From positions 124,001-188,000 of the IMG/VR virus record IMGVR_UViG_3300032242_002041: 64,000 bases of DNA; one strand, written 5' to 3'. The notes under the pieces are model-generated. The model was not told the origin of the DNA and ran no database searches. It saw only the letters and a list, made by a program, of their open reading frames with translations. Made by a program: the position numbers and the translations under genes. The first letter of the stretch is position 1. Every line of letters starts with the position of its first letter. Below, piece after piece: positions 11,899-31,777 of this stretch.

Positions 11899-11991
11899 TG
11901 GAGGAGGGCTAGGGATTCGAACCCTAGATGGACTGTTAAGGCCCATGTCCGCTTAGTAGGCGGATGCCTTCGACCGCTCGGCCAGCCCTCC
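11899..11991 (-). tRNA. tRNA-Ser(ACT), long variable arm
   Basis: Stem TCCGC/GCGGA with loop CT-ACT-AA; long variable arm; encoded CCA; U73. Confidence 0.85.
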
Positions 11992-19365: not shown

Positions 19366-20930
19366 AACAGTACGAAGTTGTCTTAATGACAGATACGTTC
19401 AAATACCACTGGCCTGCTTCGCGTCCATTGGCTATCTATCGCTTGGCCAGCCATTTGCGGGACAATGATATCACTGTAAAAACTGCAAATAAATTTTTGC
19501 ATATGACCATGGATCAATTCAAACGATGTATTGATCTTTATGTCTCTGACGCTACCGTACTTGTAGGCATCAGTGCCACAGTAATGTTTGATTACCCAAA
19601 GGGATGGTTTTTTGGCATTTCAGACGAGGAAATGTTAGAACGAATTGCTTATATTAAAAGTCGCAATCCTGCCGTAAAAGTAGTGGTAGGCGGAGCACAA
19701 GCCGATATTATGGACAACGAATTTTTACAAACCTTTAAGACCATTGACTATGTTTGCCAAGGTCAAGGCGAAAACATTCTACTGGCCATTTATCGACATC
19801 TTAAGTGGGGAGAAAAGCTACGATCCAGCGGACTTGAGTCGCCAAAAATTATAACAGAAAATTTTTACAAATACGAGGATTTTTGTTCAAGTAAGAACAC
19901 TTTTACCGAAGACGATGACATTGTGCCCAGAGAAGCACTACCGTTAGAAATTGCCCGCGGCTGTATTTTTAAATGTAAATTTTGTGCCTACGATTTAACA
20001 CAGAAAAAGTTTATGGACTACACAAAGACTTTTGATAACCTACGAGCTGAATTTATTAATAATTACGAAAATTTTCAAACCCAGCACTACTATACTTCGG
20101 ATGATTTGATCAACGACAGCGTGGAAAAGGTCGATATGTTGTTGGCTGTTACTGAATCTTTGCCTTTTAAAATTTATCTTGGCGGCTACATTCGTTTAGA
20201 TTTGGTGCGCAGATATCCAGACATGATTGAAAAATTAAAACGCATTGGGCTAGTAGGAGGGTTTGTTGGCATTGAAACCATCAATGATAAGAGCGGCCGC
20301 GCTGTAGGCAAAGGGCTAGGACGTCAACGTATCGAAGAAGCACTACAACAATGCAAGGATGTCTGGCAAGGGGAAGTTTATATACAAGCCGGGTTTATAC
20401 TTGGGTTGCCACACGACACAGTCGAAACAGGACCCGAGCTATACGAGTGGGGCAAGGCGGCAATTGATAATAGCCTAATTCATAAATTAAATATACAGCC
20501 GTTAAAAATTAACCCCAACCTAGGAAAATCTGACATAAACGAACATCCTGAAACTTATGGCTATCAAATTGAGTTAGAAGGTGCAAAGACAATATTTGCT
20601 CATCAAGCCCTGGTCAAAAAACCCAAAGGCATACACGACACAGCTGAGTGGAAAACAGAAACATATAATTCTAAACAAGCTGTAACAGACGCCGCACGAT
20701 ATAATACAGAATTAACACAGAGACAAGTAATACCTGAGTATGCCATAAGTCCGTTTGGATTGCCTATGATTTTGGCACTGCTACCCAAGGATCTTGCCGA
20801 ACAGTTTGTACGATATAATACCAGATTCATACCAGCCACAGACGAAATGACCAATAGATTTAAATCTGCATTGACAAGAAACTATAATAATTACGAACAA
20901 GCGTATTTTAAAAAGTTGTTACAACTTTAA
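19362..20930 (+). CDS. B12-binding radical SAM protein
   Basis: N-terminal cobalamin-type domain (VVVGGAQA, GQGE); ARGCIFKCKFC; FVGIET. Confidence 0.85.
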   Translation: MKQYEVVLMTDTFKYHWPASRPLAIYRLASHLRDNDITVKTANKFLHMTMDQFKRCIDLYVSDATVLVGISATVMFDYPKGWFFGISDEEMLERIAYIKSRNPAVKVVVGGAQADIMDNEFLQTFKTIDYVCQGQGENILLAIYRHLKWGEKLRSSGLESPKIITENFYKYEDFCSSKNTFTEDDDIVPREALPLEIARGCIFKCKFCAYDLTQKKFMDYTKTFDNLRAEFINNYENFQTQHYYTSDDLINDSVEKVDMLLAVTESLPFKIYLGGYIRLDLVRRYPDMIEKLKRIGLVGGFVGIETINDKSGRAVGKGLGRQRIEEALQQCKDVWQGEVYIQAGFILGLPHDTVETGPELYEWGKAAIDNSLIHKLNIQPLKINPNLGKSDINEHPETYGYQIELEGAKTIFAHQALVKKPKGIHDTAEWKTETYNSKQAVTDAARYNTELTQRQVIPEYAISPFGLPMILALLPKDLAEQFVRYNTRFIPATDEMTNRFKSALTRNYNNYEQAYFKKLLQL

Positions 20931-22387
20931 GTTTTAGAAAAGTAGTCTAATTTTTTTTGCTTGTATTGATCAACAAATTTATTAGTGTTAACGGCCAGCA
21001 CTTCAAAAGGATTTATTGTTGATTGTGCAGGGTGATATTTTGTCCACCAGCTGATAGATTCATAAACCACAGACATATCAAATATCATCCACGGGTTGCA
21101 CTTGATATTACCGGCAGATTGACGGTTAAGCTCATCACACAGGCCAATTGCTTGAGGTAGTGTTAATTGATCATTTTCCCATGCAACTAAACTAAGCCCT
21201 CGATCTCGTAATCCTCTACCCGATGGTATAGTTGTCTGTTTAACAGTTTCTTTATAGCCATACTTTGCGTAGTCCTGTTCAATAGGACTTAACACTTCGC
21301 CAGACCCGTTGTTTTGTTTAATTGACAAAGGAAACCAATACCACATGTCCATGGGTCGTTCGGTGTTTAGCCACTCACATATTTCTCTTTGTTTTTCAAC
21401 TGTGTCTTTAGGTAGCCCAGCAATAAAAGTACCGTAGATGAACAAGTCAGGATATTGTAGTCGAATGTCTTTTAGGTATTGTACCAGCAGGGTTGGATCA
21501 ACTGTTTTGCCTATAAGTCGACCTGTATCTTTGTTTAAGGAATCAATTCCAAAATGCACAGCAACTACTCCGGCTTTGACTAGTTTGTCTAATAGCCCGG
21601 GCTGTTTGTATAATAAATCGAGCCGCAGGAAGCAAACCACTTGAATAGGTTCGGGAATAAGAGTTGAAATATGTAGTAGTAAGTTGGCTTTTTCGTCAGT
21701 GTCATTAAACGTGCTATCTATTATTGAAAATTTGGTAATACCATAGTGTTGATAGGCATACAGGAATTCGTCAACAATGGCCTGCTCGCTCTTTTCAAAA
21801 TCTTGTTTACGGACGCCAATTGCACTGTGGTTGCAAAATGAACATTTAAAAATACAACCTCTTGAAAAAGTCACAACCTGAAATTCGTTAGGATCAACAA
21901 AGTCAGTGGGCAAATATTTGATACTAAACGCACTGGCCTTCATGTCGTTAGGATAGTCACGACTGGCGTTTACCAGCTGATTGGCGGATTTAACTGTGCT
22001 AGGATTTTGAAGTATTTCTAGAACAGCAGTTTCGGCGAAACCCTCCACATAGTAATCGGCATTGGCATAGTTTAAGCGCAATACTCGTTCGCCAAAAATT
22101 ATAATTTTAGCATCGGGGACTATGATTTTGATCTTGGTGTAGAGCAACTCCCAGTCATTGTACCTTTTGTCCAGGGTAGAAACCATGCATATAAATTCTG
22201 GTTGGTTATTTTTGATTATGCTGGACAACTCATCCACAGTAAAATCATGAAGAAAATCAACTACATCTACTTGAATGTTGTGCCCTCTAAGAAAGCTGGC
22301 CATGACATGTGCAGCAGAATTACGTTTAATTCCTTGACGATATCCGTTGTATTGATTCCAATTGTCTGAGAATATTAAACCGTGCAT
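20927..22387 (-). CDS. B12-binding radical SAM protein (paralog of 19362..20930)
   Basis: SRGCIFKCSFC; IDSTFN; HFGIDS; TAAATA 7 nt upstream. Confidence 0.85.
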   Translation of the reverse strand: MHGLIFSDNWNQYNGYRQGIKRNSAAHVMASFLRGHNIQVDVVDFLHDFTVDELSSIIKNNQPEFICMVSTLDKRYNDWELLYTKIKIIVPDAKIIIFGERVLRLNYANADYYVEGFAETAVLEILQNPSTVKSANQLVNASRDYPNDMKASAFSIKYLPTDFVDPNEFQVVTFSRGCIFKCSFCNHSAIGVRKQDFEKSEQAIVDEFLYAYQHYGITKFSIIDSTFNDTDEKANLLLHISTLIPEPIQVVCFLRLDLLYKQPGLLDKLVKAGVVAVHFGIDSLNKDTGRLIGKTVDPTLLVQYLKDIRLQYPDLFIYGTFIAGLPKDTVEKQREICEWLNTERPMDMWYWFPLSIKQNNGSGEVLSPIEQDYAKYGYKETVKQTTIPSGRGLRDRGLSLVAWENDQLTLPQAIGLCDELNRQSAGNIKCNPWMIFDMSVVYESISWWTKYHPAQSTINPFEVLAVNTNKFVDQYKQKKLDYFSKT

Positions 22388-22404: not shown

Positions 22405-22434
22405 AAAAAACCCTGCGATTTTTACATCGCAGGG
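22405..22434 (-). terminator. Intrinsic terminator
   Basis: CCCTGCGAT/ATCGCAGGG stem followed by TTTTTT. Confidence 0.8.
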
Positions 22435-23027
22435 CCGTTGCCGTTCTTGAAACCTACTTCACCACCTTCTGCCTCGATACGTTTGATAACGTCTTCAAAC
22501 AAGATAGGTGCAAAGTCCGGGGTTTGTTCTACGCATACGCAATGGTAGCGTGGATCAATCTCATCATTGTAAAGAAGTTCACCTGTTTTAACATTAACAC
22601 CACGAATTTTCTTTACGCGATTAGCGTGAAGGTGTCCGTGAATATTAACACCAAAGCGACCAAGACTTTCTGGGTGAACCGGAATATGACTAAGAATCAT
22701 CCCATTCATCACATGGTATCCACGTAGACTTCTAAAGTAAGGAGTATAGTCCTCATCCTTAAAGATGTCGTGATTGCCACGTATGAGAACTTTGTCACCG
22801 TTTAGCCTATCCAGAATAGGCAAGGCTTTGCGGTTAATAACCACATCACCCAAATGGTAAACCTTGTCATTTGGACGGACACGTTCGTTCCATGCGGCAA
22901 CCATGGCTTCGTCCATTTCCTTGGGATCAGTCCATGGGCGAAGTTTTGTAACACCATCCGTGCGGGTGAAGCGACACACACCAGCATGACCAAAGTGTGT
23001 ATCGCTTGTTAAAAATACTGCTGGCAT
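22422..23027 (-). CDS. Calcineurin-like metallophosphoesterase
   Basis: SDTHFGH, HLGD, GNHD, HGHLH. Confidence 0.9.
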   Translation of the reverse strand: MPAVFLTSDTHFGHAGVCRFTRTDGVTKLRPWTDPKEMDEAMVAAWNERVRPNDKVYHLGDVVINRKALPILDRLNGDKVLIRGNHDIFKDEDYTPYFRSLRGYHVMNGMILSHIPVHPESLGRFGVNIHGHLHANRVKKIRGVNVKTGELLYNDEIDPRYHCVCVEQTPDFAPILFEDVIKRIEAEGGEVGFKNGNGPAM

Positions 23028-23203: not shown

Positions 23204-24298
23204 TTACAAATTATGTATGCGGTGGTGTAACCAATTTCGCAGAGGGCCAATAAAGTGCTCACGATTTTGAATCCACCAATGATTGTGATCTAACACATTT
23301 TTTAATTTTCTGTAAACAATAAAAGAATCTTTTCTGGCCAGATCAAGCATGGATTGCCAGGCCGCTTGCCATCGTTCACCATCATCGGTTATTTGATCAT
23401 ACGATTCATCTATTATAGAATCAAATGTTTGAAACCCTAGTTGATTTAGGTTGTAAAGGAAATTAGCTGAGCCGAATACTATAAATGGTCTTTTGGCAAA
23501 TAACGGCTTGGCTGTTTTTTCTGTAGGAAAAAAATGATCGTTATTAAAATATGGGGTTCTTGCGGTAGTTTCGGCTACAACACTATAATTCGAGTCGGCA
23601 TAAATTTTCCATGGCACACGGTTTGATTCTCTTTGTTGAAAGGGTACTCCATGACTTCCAGTTATATAACTATGAAAAGAAAGTCCACCGTTGAGTTTTT
23701 CACATACTTGATCTGTTTCGTATTTTTCAAGTCCAGGAGTACGATAAATTGTTTTGCAATTAATATCAGCATTGTTGGAGGTGTAGTTTACAAAACTTTT
23801 TGTTAACAAAGAAGATTGTTTTAGTTGATTAAACAAATAATCTCTATGAGGTTTTTTCAAGCCCAGCAATATATCAAATATATTTTCTTTTGATGTAGAG
23901 TAATTTTGATCTTCAAATTTGTTAAAAGGTGTGCCTACTTCTAACAACATCCAGGGAACCATGAAATAATTTTGATTGTTTATTTTGTCTCCGGTTACTA
24001 AAAGTATATTAGAATTAATATAATATTTTGCAAGTCTATCTTCATAATCGGGCCAAGGAATCCATTCTTTACTAAACACAATAACTAAATCAAACAAAGA
24101 CAAATCAAGTGCTAGTTGTGTAAAAGACTGGCATTGAACTACTGCTATTTTTTTACCGCAATTAAATCGAAATCGAGTATAATTACTGTAGTAATACTTG
24201 CTGTCGATTGGCAGGATATCGTAATGAGGAAATAATTCTCCTGGGCGAATTTCAAACGATTCTAAACAGTGGTCAATATTATATATTTGATTAAACAT
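23204..24298 (-). CDS. Putative glycosyltransferase (TEK motif family), paralog 3
   Basis: VVAETT...FPTEKTAKPL...PFIVFG...GFQTFDSIIDESYD; TAAATA at 24309-24314. Confidence 0.5.
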   Translation of the reverse strand: MFNQIYNIDHCLESFEIRPGELFPHYDILPIDSKYYYSNYTRFRFNCGKKIAVVQCQSFTQLALDLSLFDLVIVFSKEWIPWPDYEDRLAKYYINSNILLVTGDKINNQNYFMVPWMLLEVGTPFNKFEDQNYSTSKENIFDILLGLKKPHRDYLFNQLKQSSLLTKSFVNYTSNNADINCKTIYRTPGLEKYETDQVCEKLNGGLSFHSYITGSHGVPFQQRESNRVPWKIYADSNYSVVAETTARTPYFNNDHFFPTEKTAKPLFAKRPFIVFGSANFLYNLNQLGFQTFDSIIDESYDQITDDGERWQAAWQSMLDLARKDSFIVYRKLKNVLDHNHWWIQNREHFIGPLRNWLHHRIHNL

Positions 24299-24580: not shown

Positions 24581-24656
24581 TGGCTCCGGTCCCTGGAATC
24601 GAACCAGGCTTCATGGATTAACAGTCCACCGCCTACACCGTGTTTGCTTGACCGGA
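24581..24656 (-). tRNA. tRNA-Asn(GTT)
   Basis: Cloverleaf, loop CT-GTT-AA. Confidence 0.95.
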
Positions 24657-24662
24657 TTTGTC

Positions 24663-24864
24663 TAGTGTTAAAATTACTATTCTATGTTTAAGAGACTCTG
24701 GCCTGTGCTGGTTAACCCAGTCATTGCGCGGATCTCTCCTTGTTGCGTCGTTTACACAGCATCAGCAGGCTGTGGTTTCCTGGATTACAGGCTGACTTGA
24801 CAAGGATGGTTATCTTCCTTAACAGTTAGGATTGCTTACTCTTTCGCACACAATCTTAACACTA
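24663..24864 (-). ncRNA. Unassigned ~200-nt structured RNA inside the tRNA array
   Basis: 13-bp terminal stem TAGTGTTAAGATT/AATTTTAACACTA; internal GCCTGT/ACAGGC, CACAGC/GCTGTG, CTGG/CCAG, TCCT/AGGA. Confidence 0.55.
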
Positions 24865-24870
24865 AACAAC

Positions 24871-24946
24871 TGGCGCTCCCAGCGAGATTCGAACTCGCGT
24901 ACTCACCGTGAAAGGGTGATGTCCTAGGCCTCTAGACGATGGGAGC
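24871..24946 (-). tRNA. tRNA-Glu(TTC)
   Basis: Cloverleaf, loop CT-TTC-AC. Confidence 0.95.
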
Positions 24947-24963
24947 ATCTAAACAATAATTCT

Positions 24964-24992
24964 ATTATACAACTACAAATTACATTTGTCAA
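24964..24992 (-). promoter_or_regulatory. Sigma70-type promoter of tRNA array
   Basis: TTGACA-17-TATAAT. Confidence 0.9.
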
Positions 24993-25036: not shown

Positions 25037-25807
25037 ATGTCCACATATAACATAGAAGTACATGATAATTTAATAGCTCCAGATTTGCATGAAAAAATTT
25101 ATCAATATATAAAAACACTTACCTTTACAGGAGTTTGGTTGGAAGCCAAACGAGTTGAATTTGATTATAGTCTCAACAGTCCCAAAAATCCAGCCGACTG
25201 GATGTTGTATCAAAGTATGGGCAGAGAACTACAATTACATCGGTGCCCGTTAGCCAGCGACGAGCACAGTTTAAAGGCCTTTCCGCCAATTTATTTGTTA
25301 TGGAAAGAGATAAATCGTCGACTAGACAATCAATTTGAGTTAGCTGGGAATCCAGAAGGCATGGCTACTCCGTTAAAAATTCCAACTCCGCAAGATTCTA
25401 ATTTAAAAACAGGATGGCGTGCCTATATAAATGCCCACTATAATACACACGCAGGACACGGCGGCGACGGTTATGCACATCGAGATACACCGTTAGAATA
25501 TAATGATGAAAACACTGTTACTATGCTGTATATTGCTAATCCAGATTGGTATCCATCATGGTCGGGCGATTTAAAATTCTACGGCGAAGATCCCGAAGGA
25601 CTATCCAAAGATCATCAACAGTTTAATCGTGGTATACAGCAACGACGAAATTACAATGTTGGGTGGTTAGATCAAGGACGTGTAGTAAGTCCAGTTCCCG
25701 GACGTTTGATTGTATATGATGGACGTTGTCTACACGGAACTACTTTACCAAGTTCTCCTCTTGAAACACCAATTATTAAAATAGCATTTCGTGCTAGACG
25801 AAAATAA
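25037..25807 (+). CDS. 2OG-Fe(II) oxygenase (prolyl-hydroxylase-like)
   Basis: AHRD, WSGDL, LHG, KIAFR; TAAATA at 25026-25031. Confidence 0.8.
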   Translation: MSTYNIEVHDNLIAPDLHEKIYQYIKTLTFTGVWLEAKRVEFDYSLNSPKNPADWMLYQSMGRELQLHRCPLASDEHSLKAFPPIYLLWKEINRRLDNQFELAGNPEGMATPLKIPTPQDSNLKTGWRAYINAHYNTHAGHGGDGYAHRDTPLEYNDENTVTMLYIANPDWYPSWSGDLKFYGEDPEGLSKDHQQFNRGIQQRRNYNVGWLDQGRVVSPVPGRLIVYDGRCLHGTTLPSSPLETPIIKIAFRARRK

Positions 25808-31140: not shown

Positions 31141-31261
31141 TTGATTTATTTCCTTTTAAGAATGGGCACAGATTTATGTCCCGTGAATAATATTTAGTGG
31201 GTTTTACTGATGGACAGCAAAAATGCCAACTTTTTGTTAGTTTTTGGAGTTAACGGCGTAT

Positions 31262-31288
31262 AAAAAGAAACCCGCCGAAGCGGGTTCT
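31262..31288 (-). terminator. Intrinsic terminator downstream of tmRNA
   Basis: AACCCGC-TTCG-GCGGGTT followed by TCTTTTT. Confidence 0.85.
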
Positions 31289-31289
31289 A

Positions 31290-31645
31290 CTATTTTCTGT
31301 TACGAGGTATAATTACCCTAAGCAGTGATTAAACTGCTAAAGATTGACGTTGTGCTGTACGAGCAGAGAACTTAACGTTCTTACCTGAAACAGTTACTTC
31401 GCCTGTATTTGCGTTTGCATTTACGAGATTTGCTTCTTCGACCGAGCTTCCCCAGTCCTAACGGCTTTAGCTTTGCCGATTCTCCAATAGCCCTTGTGTG
31501 CCAATCGATACCAAATTCATCCCCACCGAAGCATACTGTTTTCACCCTCCGAACTTCACGCTGGGTAACGCATCACAATACACTTCGGTGGAGATGTCGG
31601 GGCTTGAACCCGAGTCTTGCTCACCCTACTTCTATCTTCAACGAA
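31290..31645 (-). ncRNA. ssrA: Circularly permuted (two-piece) tmRNA
   Basis: Acceptor piece GACTCGGGTTCAAGCCCCGACATCTCCA (to 31589) precedes 5' piece GGGGATG (31524); intervening self-complementary stem; tag ORF 31418-31329 ANANTGEVTVSGKNVKFSARTAQRQSLAV; outer ends approximate. Confidence 0.85.
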
Positions 31646-31777
31646 TTTTATTTTGTGGCATACTTTTTTAAGTCGACCACTACTAAACCCTTTATGTTGG
31701 ACAAGAGTTCGACCAACTTTTACTCTAAGACACAGTTTGCCTTCACTACGAAGGAATTACAACAATTCTTTTAAAAC

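What the first reader, a model, noticed from the sequence alone, without database searches (positions are those of the whole stretch)
24663..24864. Unassigned ~200-nt multi-helix RNA embedded between tRNA-Glu and tRNA-Asn
Seen: no credible ORF; a 13-bp terminal helix whose G-U pair works only on the transcribed (-) strand; a long-range GCCTGT/ACAGGC helix enclosing CACAGC/GCTGTG and CTGG/CCAG hairpins; possible AAGAG/CTCTT pairing. It is co-transcribed from the 24964-24992 promoter. By eye it does not match tRNA, SRP, 6S or hammerhead cores. Inference: a novel phage ncRNA matured with the tRNAs.
Basis: partly seen in the sequence, partly recalled or inferred. Interest (0 to 1): 0.65.

Follow-up and report, generated by a model that had tools for sequence, protein, structure and literature searches.

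The report
New structured RNA in phage tRNA arrays
The 214-base spacer between tRNA-Glu and tRNA-Asn encodes a member of a previously undescribed family of elaborately folded, roughly 200-nt RNAs that uncultured freshwater jumbo phages carry in their tRNA/tmRNA gene islands; its structure is well supported, but its function is unknown.

Summary
The element is real. It spans window 24657-24870 on the minus strand and fills the whole tRNA-Glu/tRNA-Asn spacer.

- **Known families:** no Rfam 15 family matches, even at E<=10.
- **Homologs:** I recovered 17 distinct copies, 185-215 nt long, from uncultured phage contigs and lake metagenomes. There is one copy per genome, always in or beside the tRNA/tmRNA island.
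- **Structure:** covariation is very strong. On the model-fitted alignment, 93.6% of cells pair and 45 of 60 pairs show compensatory changes. P1 is 14-22 bp, and 14 of its 15 tested pairs show compensatory changes. G-U outnumbers A-C 77:12, which fixes the transcribed strand.
- **Fold:** long P1, an invariant junction (GUGNGCGAAAGA ... UUAAACA), a P2 hairpin whose loop forms a 6-bp pseudoknot next to P1, a three-way-junction domain (P3-P5) and a variable P6.
two were wrong, the long-range GCCUGU/ACAGGC and AAGAG/CUCUU.
- **Ends:** in 10 of 16 contexts a tRNA starts within -3 to +12 nt of P1. This argues that tRNA-processing enzymes release the RNA.
- **Rejected:** RNase P RNA, Y RNA, retron, 6S, the T4 stable RNAs and an antisense ORF.
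- **Partner:** no phage protein co-occurs with it.

Function is unknown. My best guess is a stable trans-acting RNA that works with a host factor.

The parts
24964..24992 (-). Sigma-70-type promoter TTGACA-17-TATAAT that drives tRNA-Glu, the RNA and the downstream tRNAs
   Evidence: 12 of 12 consensus matches; sequence read
24871..24946 (-). tRNA-Glu(UUC). Its CCA end lies 1 nt before the start of P1.
   Evidence: ARAGORN; Rfam tRNA 59.3 bits; gap table
24657..24870 (-). The structured RNA (214 nt; RNA position i = 24871 minus window coordinate)
   Evidence: CM R1 249.7 bits, full length; fold z = -4.5; no Rfam hit
24852..24869 (-). P1, 5' strand (RNA 2-19)
   Evidence: Pairs with 24658-24675. 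On the MAFFT alignment, 239 of 240 cells pair and 14 of 15 pairs show compensatory change.
24832..24851 (-). J1/2 junction with the near-invariant GUGNGCGAAAGA (RNA 20-39)
   Evidence: Conserved in at least 17 of 18 rows: G20 U21 G22 G24 C25 G26 A27 A28 A29 G30 A31
24816..24831 (-). P2 hairpin (RNA 40-55). Its loop bases 45-50 (ACUGUU, window 24821-24826) form the 5' strand of the pseudoknot.
   Evidence: P2: 68 of 68 cells paired, 2 of 4 pairs covary. Pseudoknot: 101 of 102 cells paired, 3 of 6 pairs covary.
24807..24815 (-). J2/3 (AGAUAACCA), partly conserved single strand
   Evidence: Alignments; A56, G57 and A64 conserved in at least 17 of 18 rows
24737..24806 (-). P3 domain. P3 (RNA 65-72 with 127-134) closes a three-way junction that carries hairpin P4 (RNA 80-92, window 24779-24791) and hairpin P5 (RNA 97-116, window 24755-24774).
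   Evidence: Helices 4-7: every pair but one shows compensatory change. The same architecture appears in single-sequence folds of most members, though not all.
24692..24736 (-). P6 hairpin domain (RNA 135-179). It is invariant over 26 nt in the closest homologs and replaced by other hairpins in distant ones.
   Evidence: The 5 base pairs at the foot of P6 covary in 5 of 5; alignments
24685..24691 (-). Invariant UUAAACA (RNA 180-186) in J6/1
   Evidence: Invariant in all 17 distinct sequences. It was also an exact term of the search pattern that found 9 of them, so part of that invariance is by construction.
24676..24681 (-). Pseudoknot 3' strand (RNA 190-195, AAUAGU), directly abutting the P1 3' strand
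   Evidence: Shifted-register controls pair at 19-80% against 99% in register.
24658..24675 (-). P1, 3' strand (RNA 196-213)
24581..24656 (-). tRNA-Asn(GUU). Its 5' end lies 1 nt after P1, so RNase P cleavage there would create the 3' end of the RNA (inference).
   Evidence: ARAGORN; gap table

Best explanation
Window 24657-24870 (minus strand) encodes one member of a previously undescribed family of 185-215-nt structured non-coding RNAs. The family is carried by uncultured freshwater jumbo phages whose DNA polymerase is 43-50% identical to those of Agrobacterium phage Atu_ph07, Sinorhizobium phage Phosso and Yersinia phage fHe-Yen9.

Fold, supported by covariation:
- A long closing helix P1.
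- A four-way junction whose joining strands carry nearly all the invariant bases (GUGNGCGAAAGA, AA, RAG, UUAAACA).
- A 6-bp pseudoknot between the P2 loop and the strand immediately 5' of the P1 3' strand. It should stack on P1.
- A P3-P4-P5 three-way-junction domain.
- A variable P6 hairpin.

Expression and maturation (inferred): the gene is an accessory module of the phage tRNA/tmRNA island. Here it is transcribed from the consensus promoter at 24964-24992 together with tRNA-Glu, Asn, Gly, Trp and Cys. Host RNase P cutting at the 5' end of the abutting tRNA-Asn sets its 3' end. Endonucleolytic 3' maturation of tRNA-Glu, and/or RNase III cutting in P1, sets its 5' end. The long P1 protects both ends.

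Function (inferred, weakest step): the mature RNA acts in trans as a stable RNA. Its conserved junction and pseudoknot pocket binds a host component, probably from the translation or RNA-processing apparatus, because no phage-encoded protein tracks its presence.
For: Real, conserved, structured:
- 17 distinct homologs were found.
- On the CM-fitted alignment, 93.6% of cells pair, 45 of 60 pairs carry a change on both sides, 0 of 500 shuffles reach the observed values, and slid registers pair at only 33-47%.
- On a structure-blind MAFFT alignment, P1 pairs in 239 of 240 cells, P2 in 68 of 68 and the pseudoknot in 101 of 102.
- Divergent copies at about 86% identity lie in lake metagenomes from three separate studies, with the same compensatory substitutions.

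Strand: G-U/U-G 77 against A-C/C-A 12.

New: no Rfam hit at E<=10. No match in 50,697 deposited phage records, in 5 cultured jumbo relatives or in 151 sampled bacterial genomes.

tRNA-island module:
- Every copy lies in or next to a tRNA array and a permuted tmRNA.
- There is one copy per genome.
- Genomes with the RNA carry 10-33 tRNAs; three close relatives without it carry 0-7.

Maturation:
- 10 of 16 contexts have a same-strand tRNA starting -3 to +12 nt after P1, and 3 have one ending -4 to +1 nt before it.
- The promoter matches 12 of 12.
- RNase E can cut directly at a tRNA CCA end in E. coli (abstract of PMC5291269, seen).

Host partner: no ORF family is present in 4 or more of 5 RNA-bearing genomes and absent from the 3 RNA-less ones.
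Against: - There is no direct evidence for the transcript's ends, abundance or stability. The only RNA-library signal is one 185-nt contig from a relative, covering 41 nt (24805-24845), and DNA carry-over cannot be excluded.
- The trans-acting, host-partner step is an argument by elimination. Four of the five RNA-bearing genomes compared are 32-68% complete, so a phage partner could have been missed.
- In the distant subgroup (L110, L111, L113) the RNA is not flanked by tRNAs. In L111 and L113 it follows an rpoZ-like gene; in L110 it sits alone about 200 nt after a tRNA. In L100 it precedes a GroES-like gene. tRNA-type processing therefore cannot be the universal route.
- In several members a promoter sits directly upstream, which also fits a cis-acting role.
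Confidence: 0.6

Rival explanations
1. It is a cis-acting element of the untranslated tRNA operon. It would be a leader or spacer RNA that modifies the transcribing RNA polymerase (processive antitermination, as with put or EAR RNAs) or organises precursor processing, rather than a free stable RNA.
For: It lies near the 5' end of a tRNA transcription unit in many members. A promoter sits directly upstream in L093, L121/L128, L125 and L131, and here one tRNA lies between the promoter and the RNA. Long untranslated operons are exposed to Rho (general knowledge). In one subgroup it directly follows an RNA polymerase omega-like gene. It is found only in phages with larger tRNA sets.
Against: In the distant subgroup it lies about 1.9 kb downstream of the 20-tRNA array and is followed by a new promoter. 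A 14-22-bp helix joining the 5' and 3' ends is typical of excised stable RNAs. The ends coincide with tRNA processing sites.
Confidence: 0.15
2. It is a ligand-binding aptamer, either a stable RNA 'sponge' or a sensor, whose conserved junction pocket binds a small molecule such as a nucleotide-derived signal.
For: Nearly all invariant bases lie in the joining strands around a four-way junction and pseudoknot, as in riboswitch aptamers. No protein partner is encoded. Presence varies among close relatives, as with counter-defence genes.
Against: There is no expression platform and no consistent downstream gene. No known riboswitch family matches. No ligand is suggested by gene context.
Confidence: 0.08
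3. It is a ribozyme, either self-cleaving to release itself and the flanking tRNAs or acting on tRNA precursors in trans.
For: The fold is complex and pseudoknotted with invariant junction bases. It sits precisely between tRNAs. A metallophosphoesterase that could in principle remove cyclic phosphates is a frequent neighbour.
Against: No self-cleaving ribozyme family matches. The invariant bases cluster at the inner end of P1, far from the RNA's termini. The phosphoesterase is also present in relatives that lack the RNA. Host RNase P already explains the 3' end.
Confidence: 0.07
4. It is a drastically reduced phage RNase P RNA. The lead came by eye from GAGGAAAGAUCC, AAUGACUG, ACAG and CUUA words that resemble conserved regions CR-I, CR-IV and CR-V.
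For: L100 carries GAGGAAAGAUCCGUGC against E. coli rnpB GAGGAAAG-UCCGGGC. The setting is a tRNA array. The pseudoknot abuts P1 as P4 does in RNase P (general knowledge).
Against: No RNase P model matches, with RF00010 at E<=10 on the whole genome and all Rfam families on the element. Local alignment scores against rnpB fall within shuffled controls for 7 of the 8 members tested; the other was reached by 6 of 200 shuffles. The similar words are absent from the other subgroups. The topology differs, because the variable domains lie outside the P2 loop.
Confidence: 0.02
5. The conservation is not RNA-level. It reflects the 38-aa ORF on the opposite strand (24684-24800, plus strand), or a DNA-level element such as the inverted repeats of a mobile element.
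For: The ORF keeps its 38-aa length in five of the six closest homologs. The terminal inverted repeat is long and nearly perfect. Presence is patchy among close relatives.
Against: Variable sites fall 14/11/8 on codon positions 1/2/3. Codon differences are 147 nonsynonymous against 40 synonymous. A 1-nt indel shifts the frame in L100, and the ORF is absent or different in other subgroups. G-U outnumbers A-C 77:12. Covariation covers internal helices and a pseudoknot. There is a single copy per genome and no transposase.
Confidence: 0.02

Closest known systems
Phage T4 'species 1' and 'species 2' small stable RNAs (rnaC 139 nt, rnaD 119 nt)
   Same: They are stable RNAs encoded inside a phage tRNA cluster, directly next to a tRNA gene (annotation of NC_000866). 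Their function is not established (my own knowledge; the record calls them only small stable RNAs).
   Different: There is no homology: CM R1 gives only 2.5 bits on rnaC and nothing on rnaD. T4 rnaC contains a tRNA-like T arm in its fold. The present family is larger, has a 14-22-bp closing helix, a four-way junction and a pseudoknot, and occurs in a distant phage group.
GOLLD and ROOL large ornate RNAs
   Same: They are complex, covariation-supported non-coding RNAs with no established biochemical function. GOLLD is often located near tRNAs and in prophages (PMC5737381).
   Different: ROOL averages 581 nt with many junctions (PMC5737381), and GOLLD is larger still (my own knowledge). Rfam holds models for both, by my knowledge of its content, and no Rfam family matches here. 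The present RNA is about 200 nt with a different fold. Whether it multimerises is not known.
Bacterial RNase P RNA
   Same: It is linked to tRNA maturation, has a terminal P1 with a pseudoknot helix stacked beside it, and shares a few short sequence words in one subgroup.
   Different: See the membership test. There is no model match, the similarity is at chance level, the words are not conserved across the family, and the topology differs.
Bacterial and phage Y RNAs (YrlA) with Ro60/Rsr
   Same: They are ~100-200-nt stable RNAs closed by a long helix joining the 5' and 3' ends, and they occur in some phages (PMC4201824, listed).
   Different: No Ro60/TROVE gene is present in six related genomes checked (five with the RNA, one without), including two near-complete RNA-bearing ones and the complete RNA-less one. 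No Y_RNA or YrlA model matches. The RNA has no tRNA-like module.
tRNA-punctuated release of non-tRNA RNAs (mitochondrial transcripts, the MALAT1/mascRNA-type 3' end)
   Same: The end of a non-tRNA RNA is defined by RNase P cutting at an abutting tRNA or tRNA-like structure. This is established knowledge, applied here by inference.
   Different: Those systems are eukaryotic or organellar. Here the layout is in a phage array, and the cleavage has not been demonstrated.

Membership tests
Any Rfam 15 family (4227 models) | Covariance-model match at or near the gathering score | tested here: not met
   Window at gathering thresholds: only tRNAs and tmRNA. The element alone, and homolog L100, at E<=10: only noise hits of 9-15 bits against gathering scores of 35-80.
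RNase P RNA | Match to an RNase P covariance model | tested here: not met
   RF00010 at E<=10 finds nothing in the phage genome, while the control rings in 11 of 14 reference genomes. No RNase P family appears among the hits at E<=10.
RNase P RNA | Conserved regions CR-I, CR-IV and CR-V present and conserved across members | tested here: not met
   Similar words exist only in the closest subgroup. Local alignment to E. coli rnpB scores 16-22 against a shuffled mean of about 17 (sd about 2), and for 7 of the 8 members tested 26 or more of 200 shuffles reach the observed score (L121: 6 of 200). The words are absent in L110, L111, L121, L125 and others.
RNase P RNA | P2/P4 pseudoknot enclosing the P5-P18 domains, with a specificity domain | tested here: not met
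   Here the pseudoknot's 5' strand lies in an 8-nt hairpin loop, and all other domains lie outside that hairpin.
RNase P RNA | Cleaves pre-tRNA 5' leaders | not testable with these tools
   Needs an in vitro assay.
Y RNA / YrlA | Co-occurs with a Ro60 (TROVE) gene; has a Ro-binding stem and a tRNA-like module | tested here: not met
   PF05731 is absent from G000, G029, G030, G031, G033 and G006. No Rfam Y RNA hit.
Retron msr/msd RNA | Adjacent or co-encoded reverse transcriptase | tested here: not met
   PF00078 is absent from 5 RNA-bearing genomes. The neighbouring 364/375-aa ORF has no Pfam hit.
6S RNA | Rod-like hairpin with a large central bubble; match to a 6S model | tested here: not met
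   The covariation-supported fold is a four-way junction with a pseudoknot. No 6S hit at E<=10.
T4 rnaC / rnaD stable RNAs | Sequence and structure homology to the T4 RNAs | tested here: not met
   CM R1 run with filters off on the T4 tRNA region gives 2.5 bits at rnaC and nothing at rnaD.
T4 rnaC / rnaD stable RNAs (kind, not family) | Non-tRNA RNA gene inside a phage tRNA cluster, on the same strand and abutting tRNA genes | tested here: met
tRNA / tmRNA | Cloverleaf or tRNA-like domain detected | tested here: not met
   ARAGORN and the Rfam tRNA and tmRNA models call nothing inside 24657-24870.

The most novel reading that the evidence does not exclude
The invariant junction and pseudoknot pocket is an active site or a high-affinity ligand site. 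The family would then be a new class of phage-encoded ribozyme or RNA 'sponge' that acts on the host's tRNA or translation apparatus, or on a nucleotide-based defence signal, with no dedicated phage protein. It would be delivered as an accessory cassette of the tRNA island.
Probability: 0.12. Interest if true: 0.9.

Novelty: new variant of a known kind. Interest (0 to 1): 0.62.

Why it matters
Phage tRNA arrays are usually read only as codon-usage or anti-defence tRNA supplies. This result shows that, in a widespread group of freshwater jumbo phages, the same island carries a further, elaborately folded RNA. It has riboswitch- or ribozyme-grade conservation, no known relatives and no phage-encoded partner. 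That adds a well-defined new orphan RNA class with a consensus fold, a pseudoknot, invariant bases and natural presence/absence variants among near-identical phages. It also offers a tractable case of RNA release by tRNA punctuation in a bacterial virus. Working out its target could reveal a new way in which phages manipulate host translation, RNA processing or defence.

Tried and rejected
- BLAST of the element against deposited phages found nothing. An exact 26-mer scan of IMG/VR also found nothing.
- The two flanking proteins gave relatives without the RNA. A 24-nt BLAST hit in G001 was a chance match in coding sequence.
- The 193-nt spacer after tRNA-Glu in relative G010 is unstructured (z = -0.03) and unrelated.
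- BLAST found no homolog in 20 related phage records. The covariance model did find two distant ones in a largely overlapping set of related records.
- The 20-mer scan of bacterial genomes returned only two chance hits inside genes.
- RNase P RNA was rejected, as were Y RNA, retron and homology to T4 rnaC/rnaD.
- The small sense-strand ORF behind AAGGAG-N11-AUG was rejected. Its 26-nt start region is invariant even at third codon positions, its stop is not conserved, and the 'Shine-Dalgarno' bases covary as helix strands.
- The antisense 38-aa ORF was rejected.
- The MFE hairpin GAUUGU/GCAAUC was rejected in favour of an extended P1. RNAalifold's 3-bp extension of P1 (21-23 with 191-193) was rejected in favour of the pseudoknot, which explains the covariation at those columns.
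- The co-occurrence screen for a phage protein partner found none. The neighbouring metallophosphoesterase is also present in RNA-less relatives.
- A second, family-wide covariance model could not be built because the machine was busy.
- Two literature searches found no description of this RNA.

Full report
**What is at the locus.** On the minus strand the window reads: promoter, tRNA-Glu(UUC) 24946-24871, a 214-nt spacer 24870-24657, then tRNA-Asn(GUU) 24656-24581, followed by tRNA-Gly, tRNA-Trp and tRNA-Cys. The promoter at 24992-24964 is a 12-of-12 match to TTGACA-17-TATAAT. The spacer folds far better than shuffled controls on the minus strand (-63.2 kcal/mol, z = -4.5) and less so on the plus strand (z = -3.2). 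No Rfam 15 family matches it, at gathering scores on the whole window or at E<=10 on narrow stretches. The window belongs to a 228-kb IMG/VR virus record estimated 66% complete. Its DNA polymerase is 43-50% identical to those of jumbo phages such as Sinorhizobium phage Phosso, Agrobacterium phage Atu_ph07 and Yersinia phage fHe-Yen9. Sequencing runs that hold the stretch are lake and freshwater metagenomes.

**Finding relatives.** BLAST against deposited phages and against 20 related IMG/VR records found nothing. Laying contigs of three freshwater metagenomes from three studies on the locus showed full-length copies at about 86% identity. Their substitutions were visibly compensatory: A98G with U115C, C99U with G114A, U82C with A90G, and G83A with C89U. 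Conserved words taken from that comparison retrieved real homologs from IMG/VR and JGI metagenomes: L093, L100, L101, L102 and L103. A covariance model built from these six sequences (R1) found full-length distant homologs in related jumbo-phage records, L110 and L111 at 44-52 bits. A degenerate pattern of the family-wide invariant words retrieved eleven more loci, all confirmed by the model at 33-181 bits. In total there are 17 distinct sequences of 185-215 nt. There is one copy per genome.

**Structure.**
- RNAalifold on the six close homologs predicts 60 pairs, 15 of them with compensatory changes.
- On the 18-row model-fitted alignment, 93.6% of cells pair and 45 of 60 pairs carry a change on both sides. 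No shuffle out of 500 reaches the observed values, and sliding the 3' partners by 1-3 columns drops pairing to 33-47%.
- That alignment was fitted to the structure, so I recounted on the structure-blind MAFFT alignment A3. P1 pairs in 239 of 240 cells with 14 of 15 pairs covarying, and P2 pairs in 68 of 68 cells.
- The loop of P2 (ACUGUY) pairs with RACAGU immediately 5' of the P1 3' strand. This pseudoknot pairs in 101 of 102 cells and three of its six pairs covary (GC/AU, UA/CG, CG/UA). In register it pairs at 99%, against 19-80% when shifted. It explains columns that RNAalifold had forced into a poor 3-bp extension of P1.
- G-U/U-G cells outnumber A-C/C-A 77 to 12, so the structure exists in RNA of the window's minus strand.
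- Single-sequence folds of most members reproduce a P3 helix closing a junction with two hairpins, followed directly by a P6 hairpin whose sequence and length vary.
- Bases conserved in at least 17 of 18 rows lie almost entirely in the joining strands: G20 U21 G22. G24 C25 G26 A27 A28 A29 G30 A31, A44 A45 C46 U47, G53 G54. A56 G57, and U180 U181 A182 A183 A184 C185 A186. Several of these words were fixed terms of the search pattern, so their invariance in the nine sequences found that way is partly by construction.

The terminal helix, the CACAGC/GCUGUG hairpin and the promoter are right. The long-range GCCUGU/ACAGGC helix is wrong: it pairs in 58-67% of cells, with no compensatory change among the six close homologs and only 2 of 6 pairs on the 18-row alignment. 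The same bases form a local hairpin that covaries in 4 of 4 pairs. AAGAG/CUCUU has no compensatory support, and its 3' bases belong to the foot of P6, which covaries in 5 of 5 pairs.

**Context.** Every copy lies in or beside a phage tRNA array, usually within a few kilobases of a permuted tmRNA gene. In 10 of 16 distinct contexts a same-strand tRNA begins -3 to +12 nt after P1. In three, including the window, another tRNA ends -4 to +1 nt before P1. In some members P1 even pairs the CCA end of the upstream tRNA with the first bases of the downstream one. Several members have a promoter immediately upstream. In L111 and L113 of the distant subgroup the RNA starts 2 nt after an 82-aa RNA polymerase omega-like ORF and is followed by a new promoter; L110 stands alone about 200 nt after a tRNA. 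One copy precedes a GroES-like gene.

**Presence and absence.** Close relatives with 89-95% identical DNA polymerase lack the RNA: G005, G006 (complete) and G007. This holds by the covariance model and by relaxed motif search. They carry 0-7 tRNAs, against 10-33 in RNA-bearing genomes. The sample is small, so this is a suggestive correlation only.

**What it is not.**
- RNase P RNA. I was struck by GAGGAAAGAUCC, AAUGACUG, ACAG and CUUA words in the closest subgroup. However, RF00010 finds nothing, and no RNase P family appears at E<=10. Local alignment to E. coli rnpB is indistinguishable from shuffles. The words are absent in other subgroups, and the pseudoknot topology differs.
- Y RNA. There is no TROVE gene.
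- Retron. There is no reverse transcriptase.
- T4 rnaC/rnaD. There is no model match.
- Protein-coding. The plus-strand 38-aa ORF shows 14/11/8 variable sites by codon position and 147 nonsynonymous against 40 synonymous codon differences. It is frame-shifted in L100 and not conserved in other subgroups.
- Bacterial. The RNA was not found in 151 sampled bacterial genomes or by an exact-word scan of GTDB species genomes.

**Mechanism.**
- Shown: a conserved, strand-specific, pseudoknotted fold, and a gene layout that places the RNA's ends at tRNA processing sites behind a consensus promoter.
- Inferred, fairly safe: co-transcription with the tRNAs, and release by RNase P at the next tRNA's 5' end. 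The 5' end would come from an endonucleolytic cut at the preceding CCA, which is precedented for RNase E (PMC5291269), and/or from RNase III in the long P1. P1 would then shield both ends from exonucleases.
- Inferred, weak: a trans-acting stable RNA whose junction pocket binds a host factor. An all-against-all comparison of five RNA-bearing and three RNA-less genomes found no phage ORF family that tracks the RNA.
- Rivals: a cis-acting operon element, a ligand-binding aptamer, or a ribozyme.

**Limits.** There is no direct expression evidence. The only RNA-library signal is a short contig of a relative. Collection scans were pattern-based, so the family size is a lower bound. Several genomes are incomplete. 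A family-wide model could not be calibrated.

**Verdict.** This is a genuine new family of structured phage RNAs. By context it is closest to the T4 stable RNAs and to tRNA-associated ornate RNAs such as GOLLD, but it is unrelated to them in sequence and fold. Its function is open.

Noticed in passing
window 31238-31678 (-): A permuted (two-piece) tmRNA gene (ARAGORN; Rfam RF04321, 70.5 bits). Its predicted tag peptide here is long and odd (ANANTGEVTVSGKNVKFSARTAQRQSLAV), whereas relatives encode ANDEQFALAA or ANDSQFALAA, tags typical of proteobacterial hosts.
   Followed up: partly
window 11899-11991 (-): ARAGORN calls a tRNA-Ser with the unusual anticodon ACT. Rfam confirms it as a tRNA at 52.4 bits.
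   Followed up: no
L111:1712-1960 (-); same gene in L092, L113, L115, L116, L118, L119: An 82-aa ORF with an RNA polymerase omega/Rpb6 domain (PF01192, 2e-12) ends 2 nt before the structured RNA in the distant subgroup. This is a phage-encoded rpoZ-like gene.
   Followed up: partly
window 22422-23027 (-); homologs in 16 of 22 loci: A ~200-aa calcineurin-like metallophosphoesterase lies within 6 kb of the RNA, often directly adjacent. It is also present next to the small tRNA sets of relatives that lack the RNA, so it tracks the tRNA island rather than the RNA.
   Followed up: partly
G000, G005, G006, G007, G029, G031, G032, G033 (whole records): The tRNA complement ranges from 0 to 33 among these related jumbo phages. 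Two of those with the fewest tRNAs (0 and 5) have a DNA polymerase about 95% identical to the window's. The tRNA island is highly modular.
   Followed up: partly
L124:4218-4414, L123:81-277, L103:615-822, L126:2253-2437: P1 extends into the ACCA end of an upstream tRNA (or, in L123/L124, a tRNA-like end that ARAGORN did not call) and the first bases of the downstream tRNA. In the precursor, P1 would therefore compete with the acceptor stems.
   Followed up: no
window 24799-24815 and 24737-24744 (-): J2/3 plus the P3 5' strand (GAUAACCAUCCUUG) resembles the 3' tail of 16S rRNA, and the P3 3' strand is Shine-Dalgarno-like (AAGGAG, GGGAG or GGGGA across the family). The comparison with 16S is from memory and was not tested.
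   Followed up: no
window 24684-24800 (+): A 38-aa antisense ORF starts at the complement of the invariant UUAAACA(U) and keeps its length in five of the six close homologs. Its substitution pattern shows no protein-level constraint.
   Followed up: yes
window 23204-24298 (-): A 364-aa ORF directly after the tRNAs has no Pfam hit. Homologs lie near the RNA in L101, L121 and L122.
   Followed up: no
window 20927-22387 (-) and 25037-25807 (+): A radical SAM protein (PF04055, 1e-13) and a weak 2OG-Fe(II) oxygenase-like protein flank the tRNA island. They may be RNA- or nucleotide-modifying enzymes.
   Followed up: no
L100:4150-4200 (-): In one homolog the RNA is followed about 30 nt later by a GroES-like gene (the product begins MKPLRDNIIVTRI). 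The identification is by eye only.
   Followed up: no
window 24779-24792 (-): The P4 hairpin sequence GCCUGUAAUCCAGG resembles, by eye, the Alu/7SL word GCCUGUAAUCCCAGC.
   Followed up: partly
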